Shown: piece after piece, positions 2,213 through 17,955 of the stretch | Numbering within the stretch: position 1 is the first letter of the stretch | How the letters are laid out: each line of letters opens with the position of its first letter | IMG/VR virus record: IMGVR_UViG_3300009158_000031 | Location: 1-64,000 of that record | Strand: one strand, 5' to 3' | DNA: 64,000 bases | The notes under the pieces: generated by a model | The model's input: only the letters and a program-made list of their open reading frames with translations | The model's database searches: none | What the model was told of the DNA's origin: nothing | Translations under genes and position numbers: made by a program

Positions 2213-2644
2213 ATGGAAAAGAAATCAAAAAAACCAAGTTGGAACGAAATTATACATCGTCCACAATTACCAGAAGGATGGAGTGTTATCGAACAACAAA
2301 CATCTCTTAAATGTTCAACCACCAATTTTGTTAGATGGGGAAAAACTCATCATAATGGACAACCTGAAAGAATTTGGGTAGTATTAGTGGAACATAATCC
2401 TGAATATTACGCTGTACCTTTCGTTGTTCGAGGAGGATTACATGCTAAAGGTCCTTCAGGATTAAGTTACTTTCAAGACATTAAATCAGCAACAGAATGC
2501 TTGGTTATTATTATGGAAGCTACTGATCGTTGGATTGAAGAAATCAACTCAGAGAAATATATCAAAGCTTACAATGATAAAATTGAAGCTGCGATTAAAG
2601 CTGACGAAAAACGAAGAAAGGATTCATCCGAACTTTATGCATAA
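2213..2644 (+). CDS. Hypothetical protein
   Basis: ORF; the ATG just after the gmk stop is the preferred start. Confidence 0.7.
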   Translation: MEKKSKKPSWNEIIHRPQLPEGWSVIEQQTSLKCSTTNFVRWGKTHHNGQPERIWVVLVEHNPEYYAVPFVVRGGLHAKGPSGLSYFQDIKSATECLVIIMEATDRWIEEINSEKYIKAYNDKIEAAIKADEKRRKDSSELYA

Positions 2645-3086
2645 TTATTTAGTAGTATCTCAGAGTGGAGATTTTGGCTTAAACAAGCAATTAGCTCTAA
2701 AGGTAATGAGTATATTGAAGATGGAACATGGAAAAGATTCTGTCTATATAAATGCATCTGGCTTTACTAAAGCGGATTATGCATTTAATAAGATTATATT
2801 CATTATTCCTGAATGGAATGGAACATATCCATATCTATTCAAACAAATCATCGATAATTCAGAATGGCCTTCTCTTTTAGATAAAAAGAAAGTTCTGCTT
2901 ATTGGTACATCAAATGGTAAATTTGGTAATGTTATGGGAGTCAATCACTTTGAGTATACTCTTAATTATGTCGGTTCTTCCGTCTTTACGAAGAAGGTTT
3001 ATGTACCTAAATTAACAGAAAATATAGAAAACGAAGAGTATATAGGTTATCTAAAAGATGTACTATTAGAGTTCCATTTAGCATAA
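2637..3086 (+). CDS. NAD(P)H-dependent FMN reductase (flavodoxin-like)
   Basis: IIPEWNGTYPYLFKQIID and KKVLLIGTSNGKFG resemble the PEYNxSxPxxLKxxxD family motif. Confidence 0.75.
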   Translation: MHNYLVVSQSGDFGLNKQLALKVMSILKMEHGKDSVYINASGFTKADYAFNKIIFIIPEWNGTYPYLFKQIIDNSEWPSLLDKKKVLLIGTSNGKFGNVMGVNHFEYTLNYVGSSVFTKKVYVPKLTENIENEEYIGYLKDVLLEFHLA

Positions 3087-3176: not shown

Positions 3177-5075
3177 ATGAACATACGAGAAAAAGAAAAT
3201 TTATACCTTTTAGCCAAAACTAAATATTACGAAGGTGAACCTATTCTATCCGATTTCGAATTCGATAATCTCGAAGATGAATTAAAGCTAGAAAATTCTC
3301 AAGTAATTAAAATTGTAGGTTCTCAAGATCTAAAGGATATTAAGTTTAATCACGTATCTCCTATGCTTTCGTTAAACAAAATTCAAGTTCAACGAAACGA
3401 ATCAATCACTGTTGCTAATACTAAATATCTTACATGGTTAACTGCCAATCAAAGTAATACTTCCTTACAAATGGAAGCTACTCCTAAATTCGATGGTTCT
3501 TCTTGTAATTTGATTTACGAAAATGGTAAACTAACTCTCGCATTAACTCGTGGTGATGGTGCTAAAGGCCAAAATATTATTGAAAAAATGAAATTGATTG
3601 TACCTAATACAATCTCTTCAAAAGATAAAATCGAAATTCGAGGTGAAGTGGTTATTCCAGTAACTACGTTCGATTCTAAATATGCCGCAATATATAAAAA
3701 TCCACGAAACTTCGTTGCTGGTATTCTAGGTAGGGATATCGTCGATACCTCAATTATTTCAGATTTTCATTTTATAGCATTCGAATGCAGAATTCATACA
3801 AACACATCTCAACACCATTCAAACACTCTACAATTCTTAATCGATAATCAATTCAGAACTACACCAAAAATGATTATGTTCGATAAATTCGAATATGCTT
3901 ATAATGAAATACATAATTATCGAACAAACGGTTCACCTTACCAATTAGATGGTATGGTTATTAAATTCCCAGAAAATTTAAGAAATGTAATTGGCGAAAC
4001 CGATTATGCACCTAAATGGGCAGTAGCAATTAAATTTCCTCCAAAGGAATCTATTACCACAATCAAAAAAATTATATGGAACGTTGGTATATCTTCTGAA
4101 TTTACACCAGTTGCAGTACTCGATCCAATCGATTTAGATGGAACTATCGTTTCAAATGTTAATCTTCATAATTATGGTAATGTAATACGTCAAGGTTTAC
4201 TTCCAGGTGCTCAAGTAATTATCGTAAAATCTGGTGATATCATTCCTATCGTTCAAAAAGTTATTAAACCTTCTACTGAATCTATCGAAAAATATCTACC
4301 TTCTCCGTGTTCTTCTCAATGTAAAATTGAAGTACAAGGTAATATTCACTTAGTATGTACAAATCCTACATGTCCTAACAAATCAATTCTACAATTAATG
4401 CGAGGAATTGGTACCTTCGGTTTTCGAAATGTAGCCGGATCTACGATTAAGAAAATTCACAAAGCAGGTATACAATCAATACATGATATATTCGATAATT
4501 CTAAATTCAACGAACAAAAACTAATTGAAAGTGGCGAATTTAAAAAAGGAAGATCGCTAGAAATTCTTCTTAATTCTCGAAATAATCCAGAAAGAAAAAT
4601 AACGCTTCCCCTGGTTATTGCATCGTTATCCTTCGATAACGTTGGATTTTCTACTGCTACACAAATAGCTAAGTTATTCGAAAACAAAACACCTGATTGG
4701 ACCGGATTATCATCTGCATCTTATTTACCTTTCTTAAATAAACAATCTACTGAATATCTATCAGTTCTTCGCTTAATACAAACTCTAGAATCTAATGGAT
4801 TTGCAATACAAAGCGAAGAAGTTCGTACAATTTCAGTAAATTCAATTATCTTTGAAATGACCGGATCACCAAAACCTTATGGATTTAAAACCAAGGAAGA
4901 TTTCTTAAAGTTAATTACCAACAATGGTTATTCTCATGGTGATCTTAATGATAAATGCAAAATATTAATTACTGACGATATCAATTCAAATTCATCTAAA
5001 ATGACAAAAGCTAAAAAGTTAGGTGTTGAAATCATGACTTATGAAGATATTCTTAATAAAATCAAGAATATATAA
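3177..5075 (+). CDS. ligA: NAD-dependent DNA ligase
   Basis: KxDG motif (PKFDG), TRGDG, RGEV, NPRN, DGMVIK, PKWAVAIKF, a Cys4 Zn finger and a C-terminal BRCT domain. Confidence 0.95.
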   Translation: MNIREKENLYLLAKTKYYEGEPILSDFEFDNLEDELKLENSQVIKIVGSQDLKDIKFNHVSPMLSLNKIQVQRNESITVANTKYLTWLTANQSNTSLQMEATPKFDGSSCNLIYENGKLTLALTRGDGAKGQNIIEKMKLIVPNTISSKDKIEIRGEVVIPVTTFDSKYAAIYKNPRNFVAGILGRDIVDTSIISDFHFIAFECRIHTNTSQHHSNTLQFLIDNQFRTTPKMIMFDKFEYAYNEIHNYRTNGSPYQLDGMVIKFPENLRNVIGETDYAPKWAVAIKFPPKESITTIKKIIWNVGISSEFTPVAVLDPIDLDGTIVSNVNLHNYGNVIRQGLLPGAQVIIVKSGDIIPIVQKVIKPSTESIEKYLPSPCSSQCKIEVQGNIHLVCTNPTCPNKSILQLMRGIGTFGFRNVAGSTIKKIHKAGIQSIHDIFDNSKFNEQKLIESGEFKKGRSLEILLNSRNNPERKITLPLVIASLSFDNVGFSTATQIAKLFENKTPDWTGLSSASYLPFLNKQSTEYLSVLRLIQTLESNGFAIQSEEVRTISVNSIIFEMTGSPKPYGFKTKEDFLKLITNNGYSHGDLNDKCKILITDDINSNSSKMTKAKKLGVEIMTYEDILNKIKNI

Positions 5076-5083
5076 CTAACAAC

Positions 5084-5425
5084 ATGAACAAGCTACCTAC
5101 ATATCAAGAGTTCTTAAATGAATCATTAGTTATCCTTTCTTTGAAAGGTATAATGAAGAATGAATTTATGAACAATATAGAACTTAAGCAAGAGTTCGAA
5201 ACCGCTAGAAGATTATTCTTCGACAATGGTTCATGTTTATTCGATCACATTGAAGGCGATCGATTTACGCTAAGAACGCATTCTACATTCGAAACTTCGG
5301 ATATGGATGCACTCATTACAAAGATCAACGACGAAATTGAAAGGTTTTCTTTCAAGAGAGTCGGTCCGGCTAAAAAGAATATCATTAAAGAAAATCTTTG
5401 GTCTCTTAAAGCCAAACTTAATTGA
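5084..5425 (+). CDS. Putative internal head protein with a capsid-targeting N-terminus
   Basis: MNKLPTYQEFLNE resembles T4 IP MKTYQEFIAE. Late motif AATATATA at 5067-5074. Confidence 0.6.
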   Translation: MNKLPTYQEFLNESLVILSLKGIMKNEFMNNIELKQEFETARRLFFDNGSCLFDHIEGDRFTLRTHSTFETSDMDALITKINDEIERFSFKRVGPAKKNIIKENLWSLKAKLN

Positions 5426-5473
5426 TACTTTTTAATCATTTCATTCATTTAATTATTATTAATCCCACAAAAC

Positions 5474-6184
5474 ATGACAAAATACTTTAAGTATTCTGAC
5501 TTTGAGCAAGCGTTTCTTTGCATTAATGGCGAAATAATTACCAATCCTGAATATCGTTCAACTTCTCGATTAGGTGATATGTTAGAAATTCAAAGTCTTA
5601 CATATGAAGTTGCAGATCCAACAACATATAAATTCACAAACGAAAACATCGGCAGATTAAATTACGATTATGCAGATACATTTTATCAATGGATGATATC
5701 TGGATCTACTGATAATGAAGCACTTCTTAAAGATTATCCTAATGTTGCAAGATTCATGGAAAAACCTAAATCTCCTGATCTTCCAGCAAATTTCAATACA
5801 TTCTATGGTCCTCGTATTCTAGAACAACTACCTCACGTTATCAAAGAACTTAAAGATCATCCTGATACTCGTCGAGCAGTAATTTCTATCCTTGATAAAA
5901 GTGATGTACTTCTTCTCGATAAACCAAATGAAACTCTTGAATTTCCTTGTTGTGATTCTGCAACATTCTCTATTCGTGAAGGTAAGCTGAATATTCACTT
6001 ACATATGCGTTCACAAAATATAGGTCAAGTACTTAAGCTGGATATGTATCTATGGGGTAGATTTCAAACGCAAATTGCTGAAGAATTAGGTTTACCTGTT
6101 GGTAGATTCGTTTCAACTGTAGTTTCTGCTCATGTATTCGAAAAAGATATTGCTTACTTAAATGACTTAATTATTAATTCGTAA
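5474..6184 (+). CDS. Thymidylate-synthase-fold dCMP-modifying enzyme (gp42-like, atypical)
   Basis: Motifs YGPRI, DTRRAV, catalytic PC, MRS and SAH. Asp occupies the cytosine-specificity position (RSQNIGQVLKLD). Confidence 0.85.
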   Translation: MTKYFKYSDFEQAFLCINGEIITNPEYRSTSRLGDMLEIQSLTYEVADPTTYKFTNENIGRLNYDYADTFYQWMISGSTDNEALLKDYPNVARFMEKPKSPDLPANFNTFYGPRILEQLPHVIKELKDHPDTRRAVISILDKSDVLLLDKPNETLEFPCCDSATFSIREGKLNIHLHMRSQNIGQVLKLDMYLWGRFQTQIAEELGLPVGRFVSTVVSAHVFEKDIAYLNDLIINS

Positions 6185-6194
6185 ATCCAAACAA

Positions 6195-7511
6195 ATGAAA
6201 GATAAAAAACTCCAAGTATTCTATGCAGTTCAAGTATCAAACTTTACATTAGTAAATGGCAAACCTAAATGGTTATTGCGAAATGATGCATGCACTAACA
6301 TTGCAATCGGAATCATCTCTACGGTTTTAAAGAGATATCCTGATCAATTCAAATTTTTAATTAAACTTCCTTCTGCTTATGATACAGTAGATGTGGTTCA
6401 ATTAGAAGATCTATTTAAACCAGAATTTCATAAAGATATCGAATTTCTTATTGATGATATCCCTCATTCTCCAGTAACTAGTCGCTATCATTTCGATATG
6501 CAACGATATCTCGTTCATCCTGAATATGCAAAAGCTTTCAGCGAAGTAGATCTTATGATTAATGATGAAAATACATTAACGAAGAATTGGCGAGTACTTT
6601 TCAATGAAATGAAATTAACCATCCCAATCATTTCTACGAATTATTTCCTCGATTCACCTATCGCAAATAAAGTTCCAGAAAAACTTCGTTATTATGAACG
6701 TCAAATGGAATCTTTTATTACATCGGATATTGCTGCATTTCAATGCGAAGCTGGCAGAGTCGAAGCTATGGAAGCTTATGATGTTTTATTTAAGACTCGT
6801 GAGATTCTAGCTCCTCAATCCGTATGGGGTGTTGGTGCACATTATGCCGAAATCGAAGAATATCATACAGATAAAAAATTCGAGATACCTACAATTTACT
6901 TTGGCAATCGTATTTCGGATACTGCAAATCGTTATACTAATTATGATACATTCGCCGAAGCAATTGGTATTCTATCGACTATCACCGATAAACCATTTCG
7001 AGCAGTAATGCTTAATCCAACTCGTAAAGTTACTGCCGATCAATTGAATTTAATTGCAGATCTATCTAAACATCAAGTTGAAGTAATGTCTAACGATGAA
7101 AAATTCACTCGTCAAGATTATCTAACATTCATCAACAAATCTCATATTGCTTGTAACCTATTCGTCACCGAAGTTCATGGTGGTGTTACTCATTGTGAAG
7201 CAATGATGGCTAAGAATATTTTGGTAATGCCTAAAGTAAATAATTACTGGCACAAAATGAAAAAGGCTGGTCATGAAGATTATCCTCTATTCACTGCACT
7301 CGATTCAACGAATTCTCATAAACCAGATGCTCGTGATGTAGCAGAAAAATTGAAGATTGCTCTTAATTATATAGATACTCCTATAGAAAATCAATTAAGA
7401 GAATTATGTCATAATGTCGGTTATAAATACGAATCTTACGAATCTGCTTGTGATCGTATCGTAAATGATATACGTTCGCTTGTTCTTCCTATCTTGAATA
7501 ATAAAAACTAA
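6195..7511 (+). CDS. GT-B glycosyltransferase (GT4/alpha-glucosyltransferase-like)
   Basis: C-terminal donor-binding motif EVHGGVTHCEAMMAKNILVMP and YFGNR. Lies in the modification operon. Confidence 0.7.
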   Translation: MKDKKLQVFYAVQVSNFTLVNGKPKWLLRNDACTNIAIGIISTVLKRYPDQFKFLIKLPSAYDTVDVVQLEDLFKPEFHKDIEFLIDDIPHSPVTSRYHFDMQRYLVHPEYAKAFSEVDLMINDENTLTKNWRVLFNEMKLTIPIISTNYFLDSPIANKVPEKLRYYERQMESFITSDIAAFQCEAGRVEAMEAYDVLFKTREILAPQSVWGVGAHYAEIEEYHTDKKFEIPTIYFGNRISDTANRYTNYDTFAEAIGILSTITDKPFRAVMLNPTRKVTADQLNLIADLSKHQVEVMSNDEKFTRQDYLTFINKSHIACNLFVTEVHGGVTHCEAMMAKNILVMPKVNNYWHKMKKAGHEDYPLFTALDSTNSHKPDARDVAEKLKIALNYIDTPIENQLRELCHNVGYKYESYESACDRIVNDIRSLVLPILNNKN

Positions 7512-7520
7512 TTAACAATT

Positions 7521-7555
7521 TGACGAGGAGTAATCATTTGGTTACTCCTTTGTCA
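7521..7555 (+). other. Intergenic stem-loop (weak terminator or processing site)
   Basis: TGACGAGGAGTAATC-ATTT-GGTTACTCCTTTGTCA inverted repeat. Confidence 0.55.
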
Positions 7556-7571
7556 TATAATAATTAAACAT

Positions 7572-8126
7572 ATGGCAAACTTAATTCTACTTGAAGGCTT
7601 ATCCAGAACAGGCAAATCAACTATTTCAAAATCGATTGCTGATGAATTTGGATTTCGTAATTTCTCCATTAAGACTAAGATGCCGGATTATGTACAAAAT
7701 TTACCTGATTTTTATCATGGTATGCACGTTTTAGCAAATGAATTATTCAGATCTTTTCCCCATGAAACTTTCATCTTAGATAGATCTTTTTTATCTGAGA
7801 TGGTTTATTCTCAATTTTTTAACAGACATTCATATATAAATAACGATCAAGTCATTTGCGATTTACTTCTAGATAACAAGTTTATACTTGTACTTCTAGA
7901 TAACAATCATCAAAATTATTTAGATCGTGGACCAAAAGATAAAATCACTTATTCTGAACAAGAATTTATTAAACAGAAAGATCTTTTCCAATGGCACTTC
8001 CATAATTTCCGTGACAAATACGATCCACAATCATGGCGAGATAGATTTTTACACATTGATACATCAATCACAACTCTAGAAGATACAACAAAACAAATTA
8101 AAACAAAGATAAAACAAGTATTATGA
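7572..8126 (+). CDS. dNMP (thymidylate-kinase-like) kinase
   Basis: P-loop LEGLSRTGKST and the ILDRSFLSE motif. Confidence 0.85.
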   Translation: MANLILLEGLSRTGKSTISKSIADEFGFRNFSIKTKMPDYVQNLPDFYHGMHVLANELFRSFPHETFILDRSFLSEMVYSQFFNRHSYINNDQVICDLLLDNKFILVLLDNNHQNYLDRGPKDKITYSEQEFIKQKDLFQWHFHNFRDKYDPQSWRDRFLHIDTSITTLEDTTKQIKTKIKQVL

Positions 8127-9280
8127 AAAATAAAGCAGCGATAGTAACCGGTAGTTCAGGTCTTATTGGTTCGCAAACGGTTAAATCTCTTATTGAAAAG
8201 GGATATTATGTGATTGGCATTGATAATGATATGCGATCATATTTTTTCGGATCCGATGCATCTACTAAAGAATCTGAACAAAAAATGTTATCTGATTATG
8301 GTAGAGAAAAATTCAATCCTGTAAGTATCGATATTCGAGATTATGAAGGATTGGAATTCGTATTCAAATATCTAACAGAAAATATAACTACTCTTCTTGG
8401 AGAACCAGTTGAATTTGATTTTGATTTAGTTGTTCATACCGCAGCACAACCTTCACATGATTGGGCAGCTAAAGAACCTCTAACTGATTTTTCTGTTAAT
8501 GCAATCGGTACCATGAATTTACTAGAATTAACTCGACTATATGCACCAAAAGCAACCTTCATCTTTACTTCGACTAACAAAGTTTATGGTGATACTCCTA
8601 ATCGTTTGAATTTAGTTGAATTGGAAACTCGATATGAAGCAGTATCTAATCTTTCGAAAAATCTTATCGAGGTAGATGAATTTATGTCAATCGACCATAC
8701 TAAACATTCCATCTTCGGTGCATCTAAAGTTGCTGCTGATATTATGGTTCAAGAATATGGAAGATATTTTGGAATGAATACCGTAGTATTTCGAGGTGGT
8801 TGTTTAACTGGACCTAATCATGCAGGTGCTGAACTTCATGGATTCTTATCTTACTTAATCAAATGTATTGTTAATAACAAACCTTATACCATCTTTGGTT
8901 ATAAAGGAAAACAAGTTCGAGATAACATTCATTCATCAGATCTAGTAAATATGTTCTGGCATTATCATCAAAATCCTATTCCAGGTGCAGTGTATAATGC
9001 AGGTGGTGGTCGAGAAAACAGCACATCTATTCTTGAAGCTATCGCAACCACAAATACTATTCTTAAAGAAGAAAATCCTGAACATAAAGATTGGAAGAAT
9101 TTCAAAATCTCCAATGATGCTCGAATCGGTGACCATCAATGGTATATCTCAGATCTAACTAAATTTAAGACTGATTATCCACAATGGCCTGGAATTACAA
9201 TTTCATTAGATGAAACTATTCGTCAAATAATCAAATTTGAACAAACAAAAACAGCTGAAGTACTAAATGAAGCGAATTAA
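8123..9280 (+). CDS. NAD-dependent NDP-sugar epimerase (CDP-paratose 2-epimerase-like SDR)
   Basis: TGSSGLIG, AAQPSHDWAA, STNKVYGD, HSIFGASKVAAD and GKQVRDNIH. Confidence 0.9.
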   Translation: MKNKAAIVTGSSGLIGSQTVKSLIEKGYYVIGIDNDMRSYFFGSDASTKESEQKMLSDYGREKFNPVSIDIRDYEGLEFVFKYLTENITTLLGEPVEFDFDLVVHTAAQPSHDWAAKEPLTDFSVNAIGTMNLLELTRLYAPKATFIFTSTNKVYGDTPNRLNLVELETRYEAVSNLSKNLIEVDEFMSIDHTKHSIFGASKVAADIMVQEYGRYFGMNTVVFRGGCLTGPNHAGAELHGFLSYLIKCIVNNKPYTIFGYKGKQVRDNIHSSDLVNMFWHYHQNPIPGAVYNAGGGRENSTSILEAIATTNTILKEENPEHKDWKNFKISNDARIGDHQWYISDLTKFKTDYPQWPGITISLDETIRQIIKFEQTKTAEVLNEAN

Positions 9281-10535
9281 CATTGGCGTAATCATTTATA
9301 CGAAGATTGGTACTAAAACTTCTATTCTTCTAGGAGAATTCGAGTTTTGGAACGATTTTCAACGAATGAACCCTGATTGTGACTTCTATTTTATATCAAT
9401 ATCGAAGAACACAACAAAGAGTATTATTGACCATCAACATCTACTTAACTTTCCAGTTAGGATGATACAGGTGTATGATGTGAAGGATCTTTCCAAGCTA
9501 AATAACCTTTCTGGGATATTTTCATATATGACTAGAAATACCTTCTTTGGAGGTCAAATGAATCCATCATGTGTTCATAATTACGTGATATCTGCTTACT
9601 GTAGCAATACGCTAAACCTTCCTTTATTTATTAGAACTCCTGATTCAGAATATCCCTATTTGGATTATAAGAAAATGGCGGATGTTCGAATTGAGAAAGC
9701 TACACCAAGTACACCTAAATTCATTAGAGAAAATAAACGTTTTCTAGATGTTATGACTGCAGATATCAAATATGAAAATGTTTATTTTGTAGCCAATGGA
9801 TCTCGTCATATGTGTGATTGGGTACAAGATATTGTATACCATGATATTCCAGATGTTATGAGAATAATGGAACCTAAAGAAATTTCTAGAAGAACTCTTT
9901 ATGTTTCGGATGATGTTCTATTCAATCTTCATATTAATAGAGAGCGTTATGCAAATCTAAATGTTGAAGTAAAGAATAATAAGCTTTTGTTTATTGGATT
10001 CCTTTCCGGATCAGTTGCAAAAAATCGTTTAGTTGCTTTAACTAAAATGTTGAAGGAAAAAACCGAAGAAATTCCTATGGATATTATTGGACCTGGAGCA
10101 GATTTGTTGATAGAAGATATTATTCGTGAGGATGTTACTCTTGAAAACCGTTCAGTTTTTGGTGATGAATTTTTCAAGCTACTTAATACATATTTAGCTT
10201 ATGTGTTTATTGGTAAAGGTAATGCGATAAACAAATATGTAAACAAAACAATTTACGATTGTATATCTGCAAAATGTCCTATTGTCGTTTACTCTGCATG
10301 TGATACTAATCAAGCTATTTTTAAGAGCAACGAATATTATTTCTCTAACGAATCCGAACTAAAAACAACCATGGATAAATTAAGAGATCCTGCAATTCGT
10401 AATCGTTGGATCGATGAACAGAAAGCTGATATTGAAGAAAAATTAACACATAACGAAGAGATATTTAAGTTCTCTCAATTCTGTAAGCCTAAAGATCAAG
10501 TTGTTAATAACATTAGAATCGAGCCATTATTCTAA
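9267..10535 (+). CDS. T4 beta-glucosyltransferase-like DNA glycosyltransferase
   Basis: TFFGG parallels T4 BGT NFFGG, and TPDSEYP parallels FTDIRLP (catalytic Asp). The C-terminal KTIYDCISAK...YYFSNESEL parallels BGT RVWETMAS...FYVNNRAEL. Confidence 0.75.
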   Translation: MKRINIGVIIYTKIGTKTSILLGEFEFWNDFQRMNPDCDFYFISISKNTTKSIIDHQHLLNFPVRMIQVYDVKDLSKLNNLSGIFSYMTRNTFFGGQMNPSCVHNYVISAYCSNTLNLPLFIRTPDSEYPYLDYKKMADVRIEKATPSTPKFIRENKRFLDVMTADIKYENVYFVANGSRHMCDWVQDIVYHDIPDVMRIMEPKEISRRTLYVSDDVLFNLHINRERYANLNVEVKNNKLLFIGFLSGSVAKNRLVALTKMLKEKTEEIPMDIIGPGADLLIEDIIREDVTLENRSVFGDEFFKLLNTYLAYVFIGKGNAINKYVNKTIYDCISAKCPIVVYSACDTNQAIFKSNEYYFSNESELKTTMDKLRDPAIRNRWIDEQKADIEEKLTHNEEIFKFSQFCKPKDQVVNNIRIEPLF

Positions 10536-10551
10536 TTCATAAAATAATAAA

Positions 10552-11166
10552 ATGAATATATTTGTACTAGATCAAGATCCGAGAATTGCTGCACAAATGC
10601 ATTGTGACAAACATGTTCCAAAAATGATTATCGAACATGCGCAAATGATGACGGCTGCATATTATTCTACTTTAGGTATTAGCCGAAAGAAAGAAATTCC
10701 GGATCAACAATTTGTAGTAAATGAAATGTTTCGCGGTTGGCCTAGAAGAAATGCCGATGGAAGTGAATGGCATTATGCAATATCACATGTCAATCATCCA
10801 TGCACAATTTGGACACGAGCTTCAATCGAGAATTTTAATTGGTTACTAGATTGTACTGAAGAACTTTGTTACGAATTCACTCGTCGTTGGGGTGGTAAAC
10901 ATTCAATCGAAAAGATCGTAGATTGGATGCGTCAAAATCCTCCTAAATTGCCTTCTTCTAAACAAACTCCTTTCGCAATGGCAATGCCGGATTGTTTTAG
11001 AACTACTAATCCGATTGAATCTTATCGTAGATACTATGGCATGAAAACAACTTACATGAAAGTAGCTTGGATTCGAGGAACTCAACCGGATTGGTGGTCA
11101 GATCAATTTGCCAAAGATTGCGTTAATCAATATTATATTGCAAACCCAGCCTTGTTGGTTGGATAA
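10552..11166 (+). CDS. Pyrimidine-dimer DNA glycosylase / endonuclease V-like
   Basis: MNIFVLD...HCDKHVPKMIIEHAQM, HVNHPCTIW, FAMAMPD and ESYRRYY. Confidence 0.85.
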   Translation: MNIFVLDQDPRIAAQMHCDKHVPKMIIEHAQMMTAAYYSTLGISRKKEIPDQQFVVNEMFRGWPRRNADGSEWHYAISHVNHPCTIWTRASIENFNWLLDCTEELCYEFTRRWGGKHSIEKIVDWMRQNPPKLPSSKQTPFAMAMPDCFRTTNPIESYRRYYGMKTTYMKVAWIRGTQPDWWSDQFAKDCVNQYYIANPALLVG

Positions 11167-11185
11167 ATAAAAAAAACCGACACTA

Positions 11186-11791
11186 ATGCGTCTATTAACA
11201 AAAACCGAGTTTGATGCTCTTGTGCTTAATGAATCATATGATGATTACAAGAAAAGCATTAATGAAAATATCAAATATCACATAGAAAATGAGCTAACTA
11301 TATCTGAATCAATATTTAGAGTAGGATCTGAAGCTTATTTAGATTTCGTTAATGAAATGAGAGCACTTTGGAGAGATGGTAAAATATCAATATCCGAAGA
11401 CGATCAATTTATTTTAGAAAAATTATATACTGGCCAAAAAGGAACTTATACCGACCGAGATACTGATCGAAAGAAAACTGTTAATTTTGATGATCCTCAA
11501 TTATCTCCAAAGGAAATTGATACACTCTATTATGTTTATCGTCCATCTCCTTCAGGAGATAAAGATAAAGATACTGGTTTACCAAAAGCTATCATGATTG
11601 GATTTGGTGAAAAAACTGGTCCTGGTGAAGATGATGTTAGAGATAAACATCAGGATCCAGGTAAACGTGCTGGATTTCTAGCTAGACAAAATTGCAAAGA
11701 GAAGAAAGATGAATATGCTTCTGGTTGGTGGTCATGTAACATACATAAATTCTGGAAACAACTAGGACTTAAAACAAACGATCCATGGTAA
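11186..11791 (+). CDS. Putative virion/internal head protein
   Basis: Late motif at 11162, LNE/INE putative cleavage sites, and a C-terminal FLARQNC...GWWSC phage domain. Confidence 0.55.
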   Translation: MRLLTKTEFDALVLNESYDDYKKSINENIKYHIENELTISESIFRVGSEAYLDFVNEMRALWRDGKISISEDDQFILEKLYTGQKGTYTDRDTDRKKTVNFDDPQLSPKEIDTLYYVYRPSPSGDKDKDTGLPKAIMIGFGEKTGPGEDDVRDKHQDPGKRAGFLARQNCKEKKDEYASGWWSCNIHKFWKQLGLKTNDPW

Positions 11792-12114
11792 ATAAAGACT
11801 GTAATTGTAAGAATTGCGAATGCAAAGAAAGAGAATCTTTTTATCTAACATTCGAAGATTATAAACCTTTTACTGATAGTTATTTCAATGGATCTCTTGT
11901 TCGTAAATTTCCTAAAGAGACACCGGCTCATTTACTCAAATGGCATATAGACGATGAAGATCGTACAATATATCCGGTAGAAGAGAATGATTGGAAATTT
12001 CAATTTGATAATAAGTTACCTATCTCGTTTGATAGTAAAATTGAAATTCCTAAGGGAATTCAACATAGAATAATAAAAGGAACCACCGATCTAATCATCT
12101 TAATCGAAAAGTAA
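11785..12114 (+). CDS. Small cupin-like phage protein
   Basis: WHIDDEDR...IPKGIQHRIIKG pattern. Confidence 0.55.
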   Translation: MVNKDCNCKNCECKERESFYLTFEDYKPFTDSYFNGSLVRKFPKETPAHLLKWHIDDEDRTIYPVEENDWKFQFDNKLPISFDSKIEIPKGIQHRIIKGTTDLIILIEK

Positions 12115-12503
12115 TGGCTATTATACAACAAGAATTTCAACACGATCCATGGAAAATGCTTATAGGTTGCATCATGCTAAATCAAACTAGCAATAAAAAT
12201 GTACGCCAAGTAATATACGCATTCTTCGAGAAATGGCCAAATCCACTTTCCGTTTTACGAGCAAATCCAGATGATATTCGAGAACACATCAGACCTTTAG
12301 GATTCTATAATCGTAGAACTGCTACTATACAAAAATTCTCACAAGATTACATATCTAAATCTTTTAATCGAATAAGTGAACTTCATGGCATTGGCAAATA
12401 TGCCGAAGATTCATATGAAATCTTTATTCGCGGTAATGAAAATGTACAACCAACCGATAAGATATTGATTCGTTATCTTGCCGGTGAATTTATCGATCAA
12501 TAA
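12114..12503 (+). CDS. MBD4-like HhH-GPD DNA glycosylase
   Basis: HDPWKMLIGCIMLNQTS, PLGFYNRR, ELHGIGKYAEDSYEIF and VQPTDKIL match the MBD4 glycosylase domain. Confidence 0.85.
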   Translation: MAIIQQEFQHDPWKMLIGCIMLNQTSNKNVRQVIYAFFEKWPNPLSVLRANPDDIREHIRPLGFYNRRTATIQKFSQDYISKSFNRISELHGIGKYAEDSYEIFIRGNENVQPTDKILIRYLAGEFIDQ

Positions 12504-12538: not shown

Positions 12539-13090
12539 ATGAATAAACATATACCTTCCTTCAATTCTTTCATAAATGAAGGAAAAGAAATTCCTATTGA
12601 AGTGACTAAAGGTCAAGCTGCCTATTATAAAGGTCTTCCTAAATCTACTGCTCAAAAGAAGAAATCTCAAATCACCGCACAAGCAGAGAAACCTTCAGAT
12701 GATCCTTCAGCATATAAAGCTTTACCTGGAGATAAAAAAGCTCAATCTAAAGGAATAGTTAAAACTTCATCTCATGTGAAAAAATACAAAGAGATGTTTG
12801 GTGAATCTGTTATTAATGAAAAAGAAGAGGAACTTAAAAAAGGACCTATCGAAAACCCAGATATTGAAAAAGCTTTAAAGAATAAGGTAGAAGAAACCGG
12901 AGTAGATTTAGATATACTTCGAGTAGTTATGCGAAGAGGAATGGCTGCTTGGAAAGCTGGTCATCGTCCAGGAGCTACTCAAGAACAATGGGGTTATGCA
13001 AGAATTGCTTCTTTTGTTACTAAAGGACCTACTTACAAATCAACTGACTCAGATATGGCTAAAATCGCAAGAGATAGAGGTCAATTATAA
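12539..13090 (+). CDS. Putative internal head protein (conserved viral RGxAAWxxGHRPGATxxQW domain, possibly DUF5824)
   Basis: N-terminus MNKHIPSFNSFINE and a late motif at 12508. Confidence 0.6.
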   Translation: MNKHIPSFNSFINEGKEIPIEVTKGQAAYYKGLPKSTAQKKKSQITAQAEKPSDDPSAYKALPGDKKAQSKGIVKTSSHVKKYKEMFGESVINEKEEELKKGPIENPDIEKALKNKVEETGVDLDILRVVMRRGMAAWKAGHRPGATQEQWGYARIASFVTKGPTYKSTDSDMAKIARDRGQL

Positions 13091-14276: not shown

Positions 14277-14882
14277 ATGCCTAAAACATTCATGAAATAT
14301 CAGGATTTCGTTGATCCTAAAAGATCAGGGAAATATCAGAGCATCACGATATTTGATGTTGATGATACGTTAGTCGTAACTAAATCTCAAATTAAAGTAA
14401 TTGATACTAATACCAATAAGTCTTTTACTTTAACTCCGGCAGAATTTAATGAATTTGAAAAGAAATCTCATCATGAAATGGATTATTCAGATTTCAAAAA
14501 CCTAGATATTCTAAAGGCCGGTAAAATTATAGAAAATATCTTCTCTATCCTTAAGAAAGAAATGCGTAAAGGCGGAAGAGTTGGTATTATCACTGCCAGA
14601 GACGATCGAAATCTAATCTATCAATTTCTACTTCATCATGGAGTAGTGGTTAATCCAAATTACATATTTGCAGTTAATGATCCTGAACTTGAATTTACTG
14701 GAAGCGTAGCTGAAAAGAAAAAACAAGCCTTTATAGAATTAATAAAGATTGGATTTAGAGACTTTACATTTTATGACGATGATGCTGAAAATATACGAAT
14801 TGCTAAAGAGTTAGATGGTGAAATTGAAGGTATACATATTAAGACTAAACATGTAAAGGTAAGATGGAACAACAAAGACTGA
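14277..14882 (+). CDS. HAD-superfamily phosphatase
   Basis: Motif I FDVDDTL, motif II ITAR, a Lys, and motif IV FYDDD. Confidence 0.8.
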   Translation: MPKTFMKYQDFVDPKRSGKYQSITIFDVDDTLVVTKSQIKVIDTNTNKSFTLTPAEFNEFEKKSHHEMDYSDFKNLDILKAGKIIENIFSILKKEMRKGGRVGIITARDDRNLIYQFLLHHGVVVNPNYIFAVNDPELEFTGSVAEKKKQAFIELIKIGFRDFTFYDDDAENIRIAKELDGEIEGIHIKTKHVKVRWNNKD

Positions 14883-15343
14883 TACACCGAAACGATCAAA
14901 AGATTGATACATTCGCAGAAATCGTTGAATCGATTGCTACTTTATCTGCCGCATCAACTAAGAAAGTTGCATGTATGGCTATTCACAAAAATTTTATTAA
15001 GATTGCATCCTTTGGATATAATGGATCTTATGCTGGTGCTCCCATCAACGAAACAACTGGAACCGAAGAAGATTCGCTAGAACCTGGTAATTCAGGATTT
15101 ATTCATGCAGAAGTTAACATGATTTCGAAATTTCGAGAACATGATCCTGAAAATTATATCGTTTTTCTTACGCTTTCTCCTTGCAAAATGTGCACTAAGA
15201 TTCTAGTTAATTCTGGATTTAAAATGGTGTATTGGTTAGAAGATTATCGAGAACAAGAACATCTCACTATTTTCGATGAATGTGGAATTCATTATGGTAA
15301 TATAAACAAACTCAAAAAAGATTATTTCAAATTAGTAAAATGA
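14864..15343 (+). CDS. dCMP deaminase
   Basis: GYNG, HAE and SPCKMC zinc motifs. Confidence 0.9.
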   Translation: MEQQRLIHRNDQKIDTFAEIVESIATLSAASTKKVACMAIHKNFIKIASFGYNGSYAGAPINETTGTEEDSLEPGNSGFIHAEVNMISKFREHDPENYIVFLTLSPCKMCTKILVNSGFKMVYWLEDYREQEHLTIFDECGIHYGNINKLKKDYFKLVK

Positions 15344-15762
15344 AATATACTCTAACAATTCTAAAACCAGATGCAATATCTCGTGGAATAGAATCTAAAA
15401 TCACCAAACACATAACCGATGCCGGTTTTCAAATTGCCGCTCGTAAAAGAATTCACCTAACAAATGAAGAGGCCTACGATTTCTATGAGGTACACAAAGA
15501 CAAACCTTTCTTTAGATCTCTTGTAGATTACATGACTTCTGGAGCTTGTGTATTTATGGTTCTTCGTAATGAGAATTCTCCTAATGCAATAGATCATTTT
15601 CGTAAGTTAATAGGATCTACCGATCCGGCTGAAGCAGAGGAAGGAACCATTCGTAAAATGTATGCAGAATCCCTAGAAAGAAACTCTATCCATGGATCTG
15701 ATTCACCGGAATCAGTTATTAAGGAGTGTGATCTTATGTTTCCGGAATTATCGTTCAATTAA
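15340..15762 (+). CDS. ndk: Nucleoside diphosphate kinase
   Basis: LKPDA, FYEVHKDKPFF, GSTDP, GTIR and NSIHGSDS. Confidence 0.95.
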   Translation: MKYTLTILKPDAISRGIESKITKHITDAGFQIAARKRIHLTNEEAYDFYEVHKDKPFFRSLVDYMTSGACVFMVLRNENSPNAIDHFRKLIGSTDPAEAEEGTIRKMYAESLERNSIHGSDSPESVIKECDLMFPELSFN

Positions 15763-16137: not shown

Positions 16138-17003
16138 TGAAATATATCATAACATCAAAAAATGTTCGTTCTGGTACTAGCGTAGATGATGCCGCTGATC
16201 CATTTCAAGTTACCGAAATAGCAACTGAATTAATAATAACTCGGTTGTATTTGATACATCTGTTAAATACCTCGATTATAGACATTGAAGATACTATCGT
16301 ATGTATAGGAGATAGACGATGTTTATATACAAACATTTTCAAAAATGTTATGTCATTCGAAGATTATACTAATTCTATTGACATCGATAAAAAAGATGTT
16401 ATAGATCTATTAGAATCCAGCAAATTTAATTCGCTTGCCTCTGGATTAGTAGACTCGAGAGAATTACCATATCTACCTTTTTATCGAAATTGGGATAGAG
16501 ATAAAAATCATATTTTAAACGTTGAAGATAGTGATCTATCAGATTATGATTTATCTTCACCGTTCTTGTGTTTAGTTATTCGAAAACGAAGTGCATGGTC
16601 AGAAAAAAACATGTCAAATGATTTTTGGAATGATGTTATATCTGAATTAGAAAATCGAGGAATTAAAATATTCGTATTTGGAAAAGAAACTGAGGGTTTT
16701 TGTACAGAAAAAACGAAGCAAATTAAAACATTTCGAGATTGGTGTTCTATTGTTAAACATGTTAATTGTAAACATGTTGCTAGTACAATGACTGGTGGAG
16801 TATATCCTCTTATCGTATTTGGAAATTCAAATTGTAAAATGACAATAATCGACAATACCAATCTTAAGAAAGCTCATGGACACGATCCATCGTTCTATAA
16901 CTCATGTATAAATTTCTCTAATATCGAAATGAAATTTATCGAAAATATACCAACAATAAAAGAATTTGCCGATGAATTATGTAGTAATTACATCAATAAA
17001 TAA
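16137..17003 (+). CDS. Putative GT-B (GT9-like) glycosyltransferase
   Basis: The C-terminal half RKRSAWSEKN...FWNDVI...IFVFGK...MTGG has the GT9-like layout. Confidence 0.45.
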   Translation: MKYIITSKNVRSGTSVDDAADPFQVTEIATELIITRLYLIHLLNTSIIDIEDTIVCIGDRRCLYTNIFKNVMSFEDYTNSIDIDKKDVIDLLESSKFNSLASGLVDSRELPYLPFYRNWDRDKNHILNVEDSDLSDYDLSSPFLCLVIRKRSAWSEKNMSNDFWNDVISELENRGIKIFVFGKETEGFCTEKTKQIKTFRDWCSIVKHVNCKHVASTMTGGVYPLIVFGNSNCKMTIIDNTNLKKAHGHDPSFYNSCINFSNIEMKFIENIPTIKEFADELCSNYINK

Positions 17004-17955
17004 TTTAACCGAATCTATTCGAAAATTCTCGGCAATACCGGATTGGCATGTTATTGTTGTAGGCGATTTAAAGAGTAAAAGATATTCACATCCAAATGTG
17101 ACTTATCTAGGAGTAGAAGAACAAACGAAACTTAATTTATTTAGTGCATTAACAACTCCATACAATCATTATTCAAGAAAGAATTTAGGTTATTTGTACG
17201 CTATAAGTAAAGGAGCTAATCTAATTTTTGATACTGACGATGATACTATTCCGTATGATGATTGGTATCCAAGAGATTTTGTATGCGATAAATTGGTAGA
17301 TGGATCAACCGTTATCAATCCCTATACGCTATTCACTAAAGAAAAATGTTGGCCTAGAGGATTAGACCTATCTCATATAAATAAGCCAAATACTTACACG
17401 ATATCTAATAAAGGCTCAAAGATAGGTGTTTGGCAAGGAGTAATTGATGATGATTCAGATTTTGATGCAATATATCGATTAACCATAAATAAGCACATAA
17501 AATTTAATAAAGAAGATGATGTCGCAATAGGAACACGATGTTACACCCCTTTCAATACACAAAGTACTTTATGGAATACTAAATTTCATTCTTTGCTTTA
17601 TGTTCCCATCTCAGTAGATTTCAGATTTACGGATATTCTAAAAGGTTATATAGCTCAAAGAATTATGTGGGATTATGGATATCAGGTGGGTTTTCATTAT
17701 CCTAACACATATCAAGTTAGAAATGAGCACGACTTCTATAAAGATTTTCTAGACGAGATTTCCATGTACCGATCAATTCCTTCATTGATGAATACTCTAG
17801 AAAGTATAAAACTCAAAAATGAGTCTATTGAAAATGATCTATTTTCGGTTTATTCTGCTTTATTAGATATTGGCATCGTGAAAGAGGAAGAGATGATAAA
17901 CCTACAACATTGGATAGATGATATCTCTAAGTTATCTAAAAAGGATTTAAGGTAA
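16972..17955 (+). CDS. STELLO/DUF288 (GT75-related) glycosyltransferase
   Basis: VITSIN, VIVVGDLKS, YNHYSRKNLGYLYAI, IFDTDDD, WPRG, PFNTQST and FRFTDILKGY. Confidence 0.8.
   Translation: MNYVVITSINNLTESIRKFSAIPDWHVIVVGDLKSKRYSHPNVTYLGVEEQTKLNLFSALTTPYNHYSRKNLGYLYAISKGANLIFDTDDDTIPYDDWYPRDFVCDKLVDGSTVINPYTLFTKEKCWPRGLDLSHINKPNTYTISNKGSKIGVWQGVIDDDSDFDAIYRLTINKHIKFNKEDDVAIGTRCYTPFNTQSTLWNTKFHSLLYVPISVDFRFTDILKGYIAQRIMWDYGYQVGFHYPNTYQVRNEHDFYKDFLDEISMYRSIPSLMNTLESIKLKNESIENDLFSVYSALLDIGIVKEEEMINLQHWIDDISKLSKKDLR

What the first reader, a model, noticed from the sequence alone, without database searches (positions are those of the whole stretch)
5474..6184. TS homologue keeps cytosine specificity but appears to have lost folate-chemistry residues
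By eye against E. coli TS and T4 gp42, the catalytic Cys (FPCC) and Arg-Ser are retained. The N177-equivalent is Asp (RSQNIGQVLKLD), the dCMP determinant seen in gp42. However, the D169-equivalent (pterin contact) is Asn, the conserved Glu of ELxW appears replaced (DTFYQW), and HxY is HVF. Inference: it may not transfer a methylene from folate and could install a different C5 group, for example a hydroxyl as in the arabinosyl-hydroxycytosine phages, or something new.
Basis: partly seen in the sequence, partly recalled or inferred. Interest (0 to 1): 0.8.

Follow-up and report, generated by a model that had tools for sequence, protein, structure and literature searches.

The report
Phage dCMP 5-hydroxylase, thymidylate-synthase family
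This gene of an uncultured freshwater jumbo phage is very probably a 5-hydroxy-dCMP synthase, a recently described flavin-using relative of thymidylate synthase that makes the base onto which phages hang sugars to protect their DNA; the enzyme is a new member of a known family, though the sugar genes beside it differ from the published arabinose pathway.

Summary
The catalytic Cys (C159), Arg-Ser (R179-S180), the R133-R134 pair, Y111 and H220 are kept. N177 is Asp (D190), D169 is Asn (N182), E58 is Phe (F70), Y209 is Phe (F222), L143 is Glu (E156), and the C-terminal folate lid is missing.

This is the published signature of 5hodCMP synthases (RB69 gp48, DLP3 gp80; NAR 2026, PMC13326640). Those enzymes hydroxylate dCMP at C5, carry a flavin (FMN or a related one) and take the oxygen from O2, and D169N is their diagnostic residue. 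The window protein is about 53% identical to the Mosigvirus enzyme and to solved structures 9iqu/9iqc (E 2.5e-76). It sits inside the clade bracketed by validated enzymes.

The published gene order (TS, glycosyltransferase, Tmk-like kinase) is kept.

What differs is the surroundings:
- a first glycosyltransferase of a family with no sequence similarity to the arabinosyltransferase;
- a T4 beta-glucosyltransferase-like second transferase;
- an SDR that has lost its catalytic Tyr;
- no arabinose genes;
- a lineage-conserved FMN-reductase-like gene upstream.

The sugar is unknown. No biochemistry was done here.

The parts
5474..6184 (+). 5-hydroxy-dCMP synthase candidate (thymidylate-synthase superfamily, D169N type), 236 aa. 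Key codons: R32 5567-5569; F70 (E58 position) 5681-5683; Y111 5804-5806; R133-R134 5870-5875; E156 (L143 position) 5939-5941; C159 (catalytic Cys) 5948-5950; R179-S180-Q181-N182 6008-6019 (N182 = D169 position); D190 (N177 position) 6041-6043; H220 6131-6133; F222 6137-6139.
6195..7511 (+). GT-B fold glycosyltransferase, 438 aa ('GT438' family). It lies immediately downstream of the TS homologue and is the presumed first DNA glycosyltransferase acting on 5-hydroxycytosine.
   Evidence: No Pfam, PHROG or NCBIfam hit and no tblastn hit in GenBank phages. AF2 model pLDDT 92.3, pTM 0.91. Foldseek PDB matches: MshA 3c4q TMq 0.66, BshA 6n1x 0.66, sucrose-phosphate synthase 6kih 0.64, E about 1e-10 to 1e-12. 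Atlas lead. Position conserved in 10 related loci.
7572..8126 (+). Thymidylate-kinase-like nucleotide kinase, 184 aa, counterpart of RB69 gp45 / DLP3 gp78. Presumed to phosphorylate the modified dNMP.
   Evidence: phrog_761 1.6e-16. 25% identity, E 2e-5, to the kinase in the DLP3-like cluster of Acinetobacter phage Bhz15. A kinase of this type lies within 5 kb of the TS homologue in 47/50 loci.
8123..9280 (+). Extended short-chain dehydrogenase/epimerase-family protein, 385 aa, closest to CDP-tyvelose 2-epimerase but with Phe in place of the catalytic Tyr (HSIFGASK). Role unknown; it is always found with the GT438 family.
   Evidence: Pfam Epimerase 6.9e-37. PDB 9rl0/1orr E about 1e-30, with alignment. 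FxxxK is conserved in every orthologue of this SDR type in the related loci. Co-occurrence.
9267..10535 (+). Second GT-B glycosyltransferase, 422 aa, structurally closest to T4 DNA beta-glucosyltransferase. Presumed DNA glycosyltransferase.
   Evidence: AF2 model pLDDT 92.3, pTM 0.88. Foldseek PDB best hit 1qkj, T4 beta-glucosyltransferase, E 7.7e-11, TMt 0.68. Atlas lead.
2640..3086 (+). NAD(P)H-dependent FMN-reductase-like flavoprotein, 148 aa from ATG 2640 (ORF listing gives a longer TTG start at 2535). Possible supplier of reduced flavin to the hydroxylase; this link is inferred.
   Evidence: Pfam FMN_red 1.4e-5. PDB ChrR and FMN reductases E 0.02-0.1. Atlas 0.94 to a viral FMN_red cluster. 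Found within 10 kb upstream of the TS homologue in all freshwater-clade loci and directly adjacent in L021.
5084..5425 (+). Conserved 113-aa ORF directly upstream of the TS homologue in nearly all GT438-type loci. No recognisable domain.
14864..15343 (+). dCMP deaminase. Belongs to the nucleotide-pool context of the pathway.
   Evidence: Pfam dCMP_cyt_deam_1 5.8e-14. Conserved near the cluster in relatives.
15340..15762 (+). Nucleoside diphosphate kinase. Plausible last step from modified dNDP to dNTP.
   Evidence: Pfam NDK 3.7e-46

Best explanation
ORF 5474-6184 encodes a 5-hydroxy-2'-deoxycytidylate (5hodCMP) synthase. This is a member of the thymidylate-synthase superfamily that has given up methylene-tetrahydrofolate and hydroxylates C5 of dCMP using a reduced flavin and O2.

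Proposed course (the steps are inferred from the characterised homologues):
1. C159 attacks C6 of dCMP as in all TS-family enzymes. D190 (N177 position) selects cytosine.
2. The activated C5 is oxygenated by a flavin-oxygen species bound where folate binds in ThyA.
3. The product is phosphorylated by the adjacent Tmk-like kinase and by NDK.
4. The phage polymerase incorporates it in place of dC.
5. The 5-hydroxyl is then glycosylated on DNA by the neighbouring GT-B transferases (6195-7511, then 9267-10535).

The result is sugar-decorated cytosines that block host nucleases. The sugar is not arabinose made by the published route, because those genes are absent from the cluster. Its identity is unknown.
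For: Shown here:
- TS-family homology.
- About 53% identity over 98% of the length to the gene-42-position enzyme of Mosigvirus phages, and E 2.5e-76 to PDB 9iqu/9iqc/9ir2, against 24% to T4 gp42.
- Complete signature F58/E143/C146/N169/D177.
- The signature is invariant or nearly so in 120 homologues. It separates cleanly from the E58/D143/D169 hydroxymethylase class among the 150 best of 1.84 billion representatives.
- In the ML tree all D169N proteins form one clade (SH-aLRT 90). The window protein groups with the Mosigvirus and DLP3-like Acinetobacter enzymes (95), and the Rhizobium IC12 enzyme (a D169N homologue from a Rhizobium/Agrobacterium phage, taken here as an RL38J1 relative) branches outside.
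- A glycosyltransferase lies within 1 kb downstream in 48/50 loci and a Tmk-like kinase within 5 kb in 47/50.
- The downstream proteins model as GT-B folds. Their best matches are MshA/BshA/sucrose-phosphate synthase and T4 beta-glucosyltransferase.

From the literature (PMC13326640):
- RB69 gp48 and DLP3 gp80 produce 5hodC in vivo.
- 18O2 labels the product.
- The purified enzyme carries a loosely bound flavin identified as FMN or a related flavin.
- D169N is diagnostic, and nine further D169N homologues were active.
- That paper cites He et al., Nat Chem Biol 2026, for a crystal structure with flavin.
Against: - No assay of this protein exists. Function is transferred across 47% sequence divergence.
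- The residue at the H147 position is Cys here and Thr in the validated enzymes. The consequence is unknown.
- The flavin-contacting residues could not be checked, because neither the coordinates of the solved structures nor the He et al. paper were available.
- No dCTPase or other dC-exclusion gene was found in these 64 kb, so complete replacement of C is not shown.
- The SDR of the cluster lacks the catalytic Tyr, so the sugar-donor step is unclear.
Confidence: 0.85

Rival explanations
1. It is a folate-dependent dCMP hydroxymethylase of the T4 gp42 type, as many database records annotate its Mosigvirus relatives, and makes 5-hydroxymethyl-dCMP.
For: It shares N177D and an acidic residue at the L143 position with gp42. 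GenBank records label the Mosigvirus homologues 'deoxycytidylate 5-hydroxymethyltransferase'.
Against: It is only 24% identical to gp42. It lacks the Glu (E58 of ThyA, E60 of gp42) and the Asp (D169) that every gp42-type sequence in the survey keeps. It falls in the other clade. The RB69 enzyme that carries those annotations was shown to make 5hodC, not 5hmdC (PMC13326640; PMC13390438).
Confidence: 0.04
2. It uses the same flavin-type pocket but installs a different C5 substituent, or acts on a different nucleotide (CMP, dCDP), so the first product in this lineage is not 5hodCMP.
For: It differs from the assayed enzymes at 47% of positions. It has Cys instead of Thr next to the catalytic Cys. 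It is coupled to a different glycosyltransferase family and an unusual SDR.
Against: All residues reported within 6 A of C5 that are constant among 5hodCMP synthases are the same here. Much more distant D169N homologues (Rhizobium RL38J1 type, about 31% identity) still make 5hodC. Freshwater relatives with 65-66% identical enzymes carry the standard arabinose genes (L014, L017).
Confidence: 0.08
3. It is a catalytically dead or purely regulatory TS-fold protein, for example a nucleotide-binding subunit.
For: Loss of several residues that are essential in ThyA (E58, D169, W80, W83, C-terminal lid).
Against: The catalytic Cys, the phosphate-binding Arg residues, Y94 and H207 are invariant across homologues down to about 50% identity. 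The same substitutions occur in enzymes with demonstrated activity.
Confidence: 0.02

Closest known systems
5hodCMP synthases of Escherichia phage RB69 (gp48), Acinetobacter phage DLP3 (gp80) and phage HY126 (PDB 9iqu/9iqc/9ir2, probably the HY126-type Mosigvirus enzyme)
   Same: About 53% identity over the whole length. Same length class (230-240 aa) and same active-site signature (F58, E143, C146, Q168, N169, V173, D177, F209). Same gene order: TS, glycosyltransferase, Tmk-like kinase.
   Different: The host phage is an uncultured freshwater jumbo phage (contig of 254 kb), not a member of the Straboviridae. It has Cys instead of Thr after the catalytic Cys. The neighbouring glycosyltransferase belongs to another sequence family. 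No arabinose-5-phosphate isomerase, kinase/uridylyltransferase or HAD phosphatase genes are present. An FMN-reductase-like gene lies upstream.
Rhizobium phage RL38J1 gp216 (Pootjesviridae 5hodCMP synthase; hexosylated 5-hydroxycytosine)
   Same: D169N, N177D, L143E and E58F signature (seen here in the relative IC12). It is a precedent for hexoses rather than arabinose on 5hoC.
   Different: Only about 31% identity. It keeps Tyr at position 209. The flanking genes are unrelated: the IC12 ORF just downstream shows no profile similarity to GT438.
T4 gp42 dCMP hydroxymethylase
   Same: TS fold, catalytic Cys, Asp at the N177 position (cytosine specificity), acidic residue at the L143 position. Its product is glycosylated on DNA.
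   Different: gp42 keeps E60 (ThyA E58) and the D169-position Asp and uses CH2-THF. Identity is 24% and it sits in a separate clade.
E. coli ThyA
   Same: Fold, Cys nucleophile, Arg quartet, Y94, H207.
   Different: E58F, D169N, N177D, L143E and Y209F. W80 and W83 are lost and there is no C-terminal folate lid.

Membership tests
5hodCMP synthase (flavin-dependent dCMP 5-hydroxylase branch of the TS superfamily) | Thymidylate-synthase fold/homology with the catalytic Cys (ThyA C146) | tested here: met
   Pfam PF00303 4.3e-13, PHROG 160 1e-35. C159 aligns with C146 in all alignments.
5hodCMP synthase (flavin-dependent dCMP 5-hydroxylase branch of the TS superfamily) | Asn at the ThyA D169 position (published diagnostic residue) | tested here: met
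   N182. Criterion taken from PMC13326640.
5hodCMP synthase (flavin-dependent dCMP 5-hydroxylase branch of the TS superfamily) | Asp at the N177 position and Glu at the L143 position (dCMP substrate, non-methyl product) | tested here: met
   D190 and E156. Criterion.
5hodCMP synthase (flavin-dependent dCMP 5-hydroxylase branch of the TS superfamily) | Phylogenetic placement among experimentally validated enzymes | tested here: met
   It shares a clade (SH-aLRT 95) with the Mosigvirus and DLP3-like enzymes, and the Rhizobium IC12 enzyme branches outside. The D169N clade has support 90. This was a quick IQ-TREE search of 40 rows with long outgroup branches.
5hodCMP synthase (flavin-dependent dCMP 5-hydroxylase branch of the TS superfamily) | Genomic coupling to a DNA glycosyltransferase and a Tmk-like nucleotide kinase | tested here: met
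   A GT-B protein starts 11 bp downstream and the kinase follows. The same arrangement is seen in 48/50 and 47/50 loci.
5hodCMP synthase (flavin-dependent dCMP 5-hydroxylase branch of the TS superfamily) | Binds flavin and hydroxylates dCMP with O2-derived oxygen | not testable with these tools
   Needs expression and LC-MS or 18O2 labelling.
5hodCMP synthase (flavin-dependent dCMP 5-hydroxylase branch of the TS superfamily) | 5-hydroxycytosine derivatives present in virion DNA | not testable with these tools
   The phage is uncultured and known only from freshwater metagenomes.
Classical folate-dependent thymidylate synthase (ThyA) | E58, D169 and N177, W80/W83, and the C-terminal lid that closes on CH2-THF | tested here: not met
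   F70, N182 and D190. The Trp residues are not conserved and the C-terminal 40 residues are absent. NCBIfam ThyA models score far below their cut-offs: 45-54 bits against 108-327.
T4 gp42-type dCMP hydroxymethylase | Glu at the E58 position (gp42 E60) and Asp at the D169 position, together with Asp at the N177 position | tested here: not met
   Only the N177D feature is present. All 56 gp42-type representatives in the survey read E-D-C-D-D-Y, whereas the window protein reads F-E-C-N-D-F.

The most novel reading that the evidence does not exclude
The enzyme is ordinary for its family, but the module around it may be an undescribed, more self-contained version of the 5-hydroxycytosine pathway. 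Three features point that way:
- a phage-encoded FMN reductase supplies the reduced flavin;
- a glycosyltransferase family unrelated in sequence to the arabinosyltransferases puts a non-arabinose sugar on 5hoC, and a T4 beta-glucosyltransferase-like enzyme adds to it;
- a conserved Tyr-less (FxxxK) SDR-like protein takes part in an unknown way.

Together these would give a DNA base not yet described. Related freshwater phages swap the sugar cassette (fucosyltransferase-like, acetyltransferase/deacetylase, arabinose) on the same hydroxylase core.
Probability: 0.35. Interest if true: 0.6.

Novelty: new member of a known kind. Interest (0 to 1): 0.4.

Why it matters
That makes the residue signature a reliable annotation rule. 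Many database records still call these genes thymidylate synthase or dCMP hydroxymethylase.

The survey here extends the published D169N rule in three ways:
- D169N is tightly coupled to replacement of E58 by a hydrophobic residue.
- The family is large in environmental viromes (at least 66 clusters at 50% identity among the best 150 hits).
- The hydroxylase, glycosyltransferase and kinase trio is its conserved core.

For this phage lineage the practical value is as a pointer. It has a second type of first glycosyltransferase, variable sugar cassettes and a linked flavin-reductase-like gene. These are candidates for new glycosylated cytosines, new DNA glycosyltransferases, and a partner for the flavin step, which the literature read here does not address.

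Tried and rejected
- DNA megablast of 4000-12000 against GenBank phages gave no match. No cultured close relative exists.
- tblastn of the 438-aa protein and of the FMN-reductase-like protein against GenBank phages gave no match.
- Profile-profile comparison of the GT438 family with the DLP3-type first arabinosyltransferase and with the ORF downstream of the Rhizobium IC12 enzyme showed no similarity. The relationship is at fold level only.
- Sugar identity could not be inferred from the SDR. Its best match is CDP-tyvelose 2-epimerase, but the catalytic Tyr is Phe, so the inference was dropped.
- A dCTPase or other dC-exclusion gene was looked for in the window with Pfam and PHROGs. None was found. 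The window is a quarter of the genome, so this says little.
- Reads of three lake or freshwater metatranscriptome runs (X6, X19, X20) and one DNA run (X3) were laid on 4500-10000. The RNA libraries gave only short, low-depth contigs (100% identical in X6), which does not prove transcription.
- He et al. (Nat Chem Biol 2026) and the supplement of the NAR paper are not held. Flavin-contact residues and the identities of the tested IMG/VR homologues could therefore not be compared with the window protein.
- The TS homologue itself was not modelled. With 53% identity to solved structures, the two structure jobs were better spent on the unannotated neighbours.
- There are no tRNA genes in the window.

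Full report
**The object.** Window 5474-6184 holds one ATG-initiated ORF of 236 codons on the + strand. It lies in a co-directional block of nucleotide-metabolism genes in 31-35% G+C DNA. It matches Pfam Thymidylat_synt (4.3e-13) and PHROG 160 'thymidylate synthase' (1e-35). NCBIfam ThyA models score far below their cut-offs. The window is the first 64 kb of IMG/VR contig IMGVR_UViG_3300009158_000031 (254,393 bp). Near-identical DNA occurs in several freshwater and lake metagenomes. The source is therefore an uncultured freshwater jumbo phage, and no GenBank phage matches it at the DNA level.

**Check of the observation.** I aligned the protein with sequences taken from annotated records: E. 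coli ThyA, T4 gp42, the Mosigvirus ATK48 homologue, and 120 metagenomic homologues.
- Four alignments agree: a 4-sequence MAFFT, a 124-sequence MAFFT, an L-INS-i of 40 sequences, and BLASTP against gp42.
- Kept: C146 = C159 (FPCC), R166-S167 = R179-S180, R126-R127 = R133-R134, Y94 = Y111, H207 = H220.
- Changed: N177 -> D190, D169 -> N182, E58 -> F70 (DTFYQW, with W61 = W73), Y209 -> F222 (HVF), L143 -> E156. W80 and W83 are lost, and the C-terminal lid that closes over the folate in ThyA is absent.
- The substitutions are a fixed signature. N169, D177, E143 and F209 occur in 120 of 120 homologues of 60-92% identity, and F58 in 118 of 120.

**What it is.** The nearest annotated relatives, at 50-54% identity over 98% of the length, are the genes in the gene-42 position of RB69-like Mosigvirus phages and of T4-like Acinetobacter, Klebsiella, Edwardsiella and Providencia phages.
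- The nearest solved structures are 9iqu, 9iqc and 9ir2 (E 2.5e-76). Their sequence is of the Mosigvirus type.
- Lee et al. (NAR 2026, PMC13326640) showed that RB69 gp48 and DLP3 gp80 convert dCMP to 5-hydroxy-dCMP and that 18O from O2 enters the product. The purified protein carries a loosely bound flavin, identified as FMN or a related flavin. Asn at the D169 position is the diagnostic residue.
- Nine further D169N homologues produced 5hodC. They included IMG/VR sequences, Shewanella phage Thanatos and Rhizobium phage RL38J1.
- That paper cites He et al. (Nat Chem Biol 2026; not held) for a flavin-bound crystal structure and an in vitro reconstitution.
- A second paper states that earlier 'hydroxymethyl' assignments for RB69 were erroneous (PMC13390438).

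**Placement in the family.**
- In a maximum-likelihood tree all D169N sequences form one clade (SH-aLRT 90).
- The window protein and its metagenomic relatives share a clade (95) with the Mosigvirus and DLP3-like enzymes. The enzyme of Rhizobium phage IC12, a D169N homologue taken here as an RL38J1 relative, branches outside. T4, Aeromonas and Bacteroides-phage hydroxymethylases and ThyA lie elsewhere. The window protein is thus bracketed by experimentally validated enzymes.
- An exhaustive phmmer search of 1.84 billion representatives, followed by a signature scan of the best 150, gave two clean classes.
  - 66 representatives read [F/L/M/Y]58-E143-C146-N169-D177. A further 16 have Ser or Cys at position 169.
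  - 56 representatives read E58-D143-C146-D169-D177-Y209, the gp42 type.
- Loss of the Glu and loss of the Asp are therefore coupled across the family. That fits the abandonment of folate chemistry; this last point is inference.

**Surroundings.** The published clusters have the order kinase / first arabinosyltransferase / TS homologue. Acinetobacter phage Bhz15 shows TS, glycosyltransferase, Tmk-like kinase, then two more transferases.

The window has the same core:

| Coordinates | Product | Evidence |
|---|---|---|
| 5474-6184 | TS homologue | above |
| 6195-7511 | 438-aa protein | see next paragraph |
| 7572-8126 | Tmk-like kinase | phrog_761 1.6e-16; 25% identity to the Bhz15 kinase, E 2e-5 |

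- *The 438-aa protein.* It has no family or tblastn hit. It models with pLDDT 92 as a GT-B glycosyltransferase. Its PDB neighbours are MshA 3c4q, BshA and sucrose-phosphate synthase 6kih. The paper reports the same entries for RB69 gp46:47 and DLP3 gp79. Its profile nevertheless shows no sequence similarity to the DLP3-type transferase.
- *The 422-aa protein (9267-10535).* It models with pLDDT 92. Its best structural match is T4 DNA beta-glucosyltransferase (1qkj, E 7.7e-11).
- *Survey of 55 loci carrying a TS homologue (54 of them with the D169N-type signature).* A transferase lies within 1 kb downstream in 48 of the 50 loci with enough flank. Ten are of the 438-aa family and 38 of the DLP3 type. 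A Tmk-like kinase lies within 5 kb in 47 of 50.
- *Association with sugar genes.* The 438-aa family always comes with an SDR and never with arabinose genes. The DLP3-type transferase mostly comes with the arabinose-5-phosphate isomerase, the bifunctional kinase/nucleotidyltransferase and the HAD phosphatase.
- *Variable cassettes in relatives.* Close relatives of the window phage carry different sugar cassettes on the same core: two SDRs plus a GT11 fucosyltransferase-like gene (L004); an SDR, a hexapeptide acyltransferase and a PIG-L deacetylase (L013); or the arabinose set (L014).

**Two oddities.**
- *The SDR lacks its catalytic Tyr.* The SDR at 8123-9280 is closest to CDP-tyvelose 2-epimerase (E about 1e-30). 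It has Phe where the catalytic Tyr of YxxxK stands (HSIFGASK against HSPYGCSK). This Phe is conserved in every orthologue of this SDR type in the related loci. A second SDR type found in some relatives keeps the Tyr. I therefore do not infer the sugar from it.
- *An FMN-reductase-like gene is linked to the hydroxylase.*
  - The ORF is 2640-3086 (Pfam FMN_red 1.4e-5; atlas 0.94 to a viral FMN_red cluster).
  - It lies 2.4-6 kb upstream of the TS homologue in every locus of the freshwater clade, whatever the sugar cassette or ligase type.
  - It is absent from the roughly 30 Straboviridae-type loci.
  - In L021 the 20-kb neighbourhood shares only this gene, the TS homologue and dCMP deaminase with the window. 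There the two genes are adjacent and divergent.
  - A dedicated flavin reductase feeding the hydroxylase is an attractive reading. It rests on synteny and weak homology only.

**Mechanism proposed.**
- Shown by homology: a TS-fold enzyme with the Cys nucleophile and the cytosine-selecting Asp.
- Inferred from the characterised homologues: C6 attack on dCMP; oxygenation of C5 by a reduced-flavin/O2 species bound in the former folate site; release of 5hodCMP.
- Inferred from context: phosphorylation by the Tmk-like kinase and NDK (15340-15762); incorporation by the phage polymerase; post-replicative glycosylation by the two GT-B enzymes.
- Not shown: any activity, the sugar, and whether cytosine is fully replaced. 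No dCTPase was found in these 64 kb.

**Rivals.**
- A gp42-type folate-dependent hydroxymethylase is excluded as far as sequence can exclude it. The protein lacks both residues that all gp42-type sequences keep, is 24% identical to gp42, and sits in the other clade.
- A different C5 chemistry or substrate cannot be ruled out without an assay. It is made unlikely because far more distant D169N enzymes still make 5hodC, and because freshwater relatives with 65-66% identical enzymes carry the standard arabinose genes.
- A dead enzyme is contradicted by invariance of the catalytic residues.

**Verdict.**
- The gene is a new, uncharacterised member of a family described in 2026, so it is not a new kind of enzyme.
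- The interest that remains lies in the neighbours: a second family of presumed 5hoC-DNA glycosyltransferases, a beta-glucosyltransferase-like partner, a Tyr-less SDR, swappable sugar cassettes and a linked flavin-reductase-like gene. These suggest undescribed glycosylated cytosines in freshwater jumbo phages.

Noticed in passing
window 2640-3086 (+); also L004 6457-6912, L013 5481-5948, L014 5795-6283, L021 9472-9942 (-), L022 3810-4280: An FMN-reductase/flavodoxin-like ORF accompanies the D169N TS homologue in every locus of the freshwater clade. In L021, which is otherwise non-syntenic, it is directly adjacent and divergent. It is absent from the Straboviridae-type loci and from GenBank phages (tblastn). 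It may be a phage-encoded reduced-flavin supplier for the hydroxylase. The ORF listing starts this ORF at TTG 2535, but relatives (145-162 aa) indicate ATG 2640.
   Followed up: partly
window 8123-9280 (+): The CDP-tyvelose-2-epimerase-like SDR has Phe instead of the catalytic Tyr (HSIFGASK). The Phe is conserved in all orthologues of this SDR type in related loci, while a second SDR type in some relatives keeps YxxxK. It also has a roughly 60-residue insertion after the Rossmann glycine motif.
   Followed up: partly
P0296, P0297, P0299, P0301 (representatives found): Relatives 49-54% identical to the window enzyme are fused at the C-terminus to a histidine-phosphatase (His_Phos_1) domain (427-463 aa). 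This fusion is not mentioned in the literature read here.
   Followed up: partly
P0316, P0340, P0345, P0346, P0351, P0356, P0357, P0360, P0362, P0398 and others: A minority of the hydrophobic-58 / E143 / D177 class carries Ser or Cys rather than Asn at the D169 position. A few carry Asp (P0327, P0358, P0387, P0392, P0411). Their product is untested, and they would be missed or miscalled by a strict D169N rule.
   Followed up: no
L012 454-1161 (Sphingomonas phage PAU gp182): The 'thymidylate synthase' of the cultured jumbo phage PAU has F58/E143/N169/D177 and branches at the base of the D169N clade. It is a predicted 5hodCMP synthase in an isolate that could be tested directly.
   Followed up: partly
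L004 11997-15705; L013 12033-17574; L014 11226-15080; 246-kb contig: Sugar cassettes downstream of the same hydroxylase core differ between close relatives: two SDRs plus a GT11 fucosyltransferase-like gene; an SDR plus a hexapeptide acyltransferase plus a PIG-L deacetylase plus another SDR; two SDRs plus a GT2; or the arabinose isomerase/nucleotidyltransferase set.
   Followed up: partly
window 10552-11166 and 12114-12503 (+): A pyrimidine-dimer-glycosylase-like / PHROG 624 'DNA binding' protein and a short HhH-GPD base-excision protein sit just after the modification cluster. The HhH-GPD gene keeps this position in the relatives. Whether they deal with unmodified or modified cytosine is unknown.
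   Followed up: no
window 12539-13090 (+); L048 434-1321, L055 1284-1820: A DUF5824 protein (weak match to the end of a PHROG labelled cytidyltransferase) recurs within 10 kb of the TS homologue in lineages that share little else with the window.
   Followed up: no
window 5084-5425 (+): A 113-aa ORF without recognisable domains lies directly upstream of the TS homologue in nearly all loci that have the 438-aa transferase family, and in none of the arabinose-type loci.
   Followed up: partly
window 16966-17955, 18653-19915, 31463-32632, 47821-55788 (+): Other features of the window: a STELLO-like glycosyltransferase domain protein, a collagen-repeat protein, a protein with C-terminal S1 RNA-binding domains among putative structural genes, and a 2655-aa ORF. 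Most large ORFs from 24 to 35 kb have no Pfam or PHROG match.
   Followed up: no
(GenBank phage records): The validated Mosigvirus-type enzyme is annotated variously as thymidylate synthase, dCMP hydroxymethylase, deoxycytidylate 5-hydroxymethyltransferase or hypothetical protein. None of the labels seen in the records listed names its demonstrated activity.
   Followed up: no
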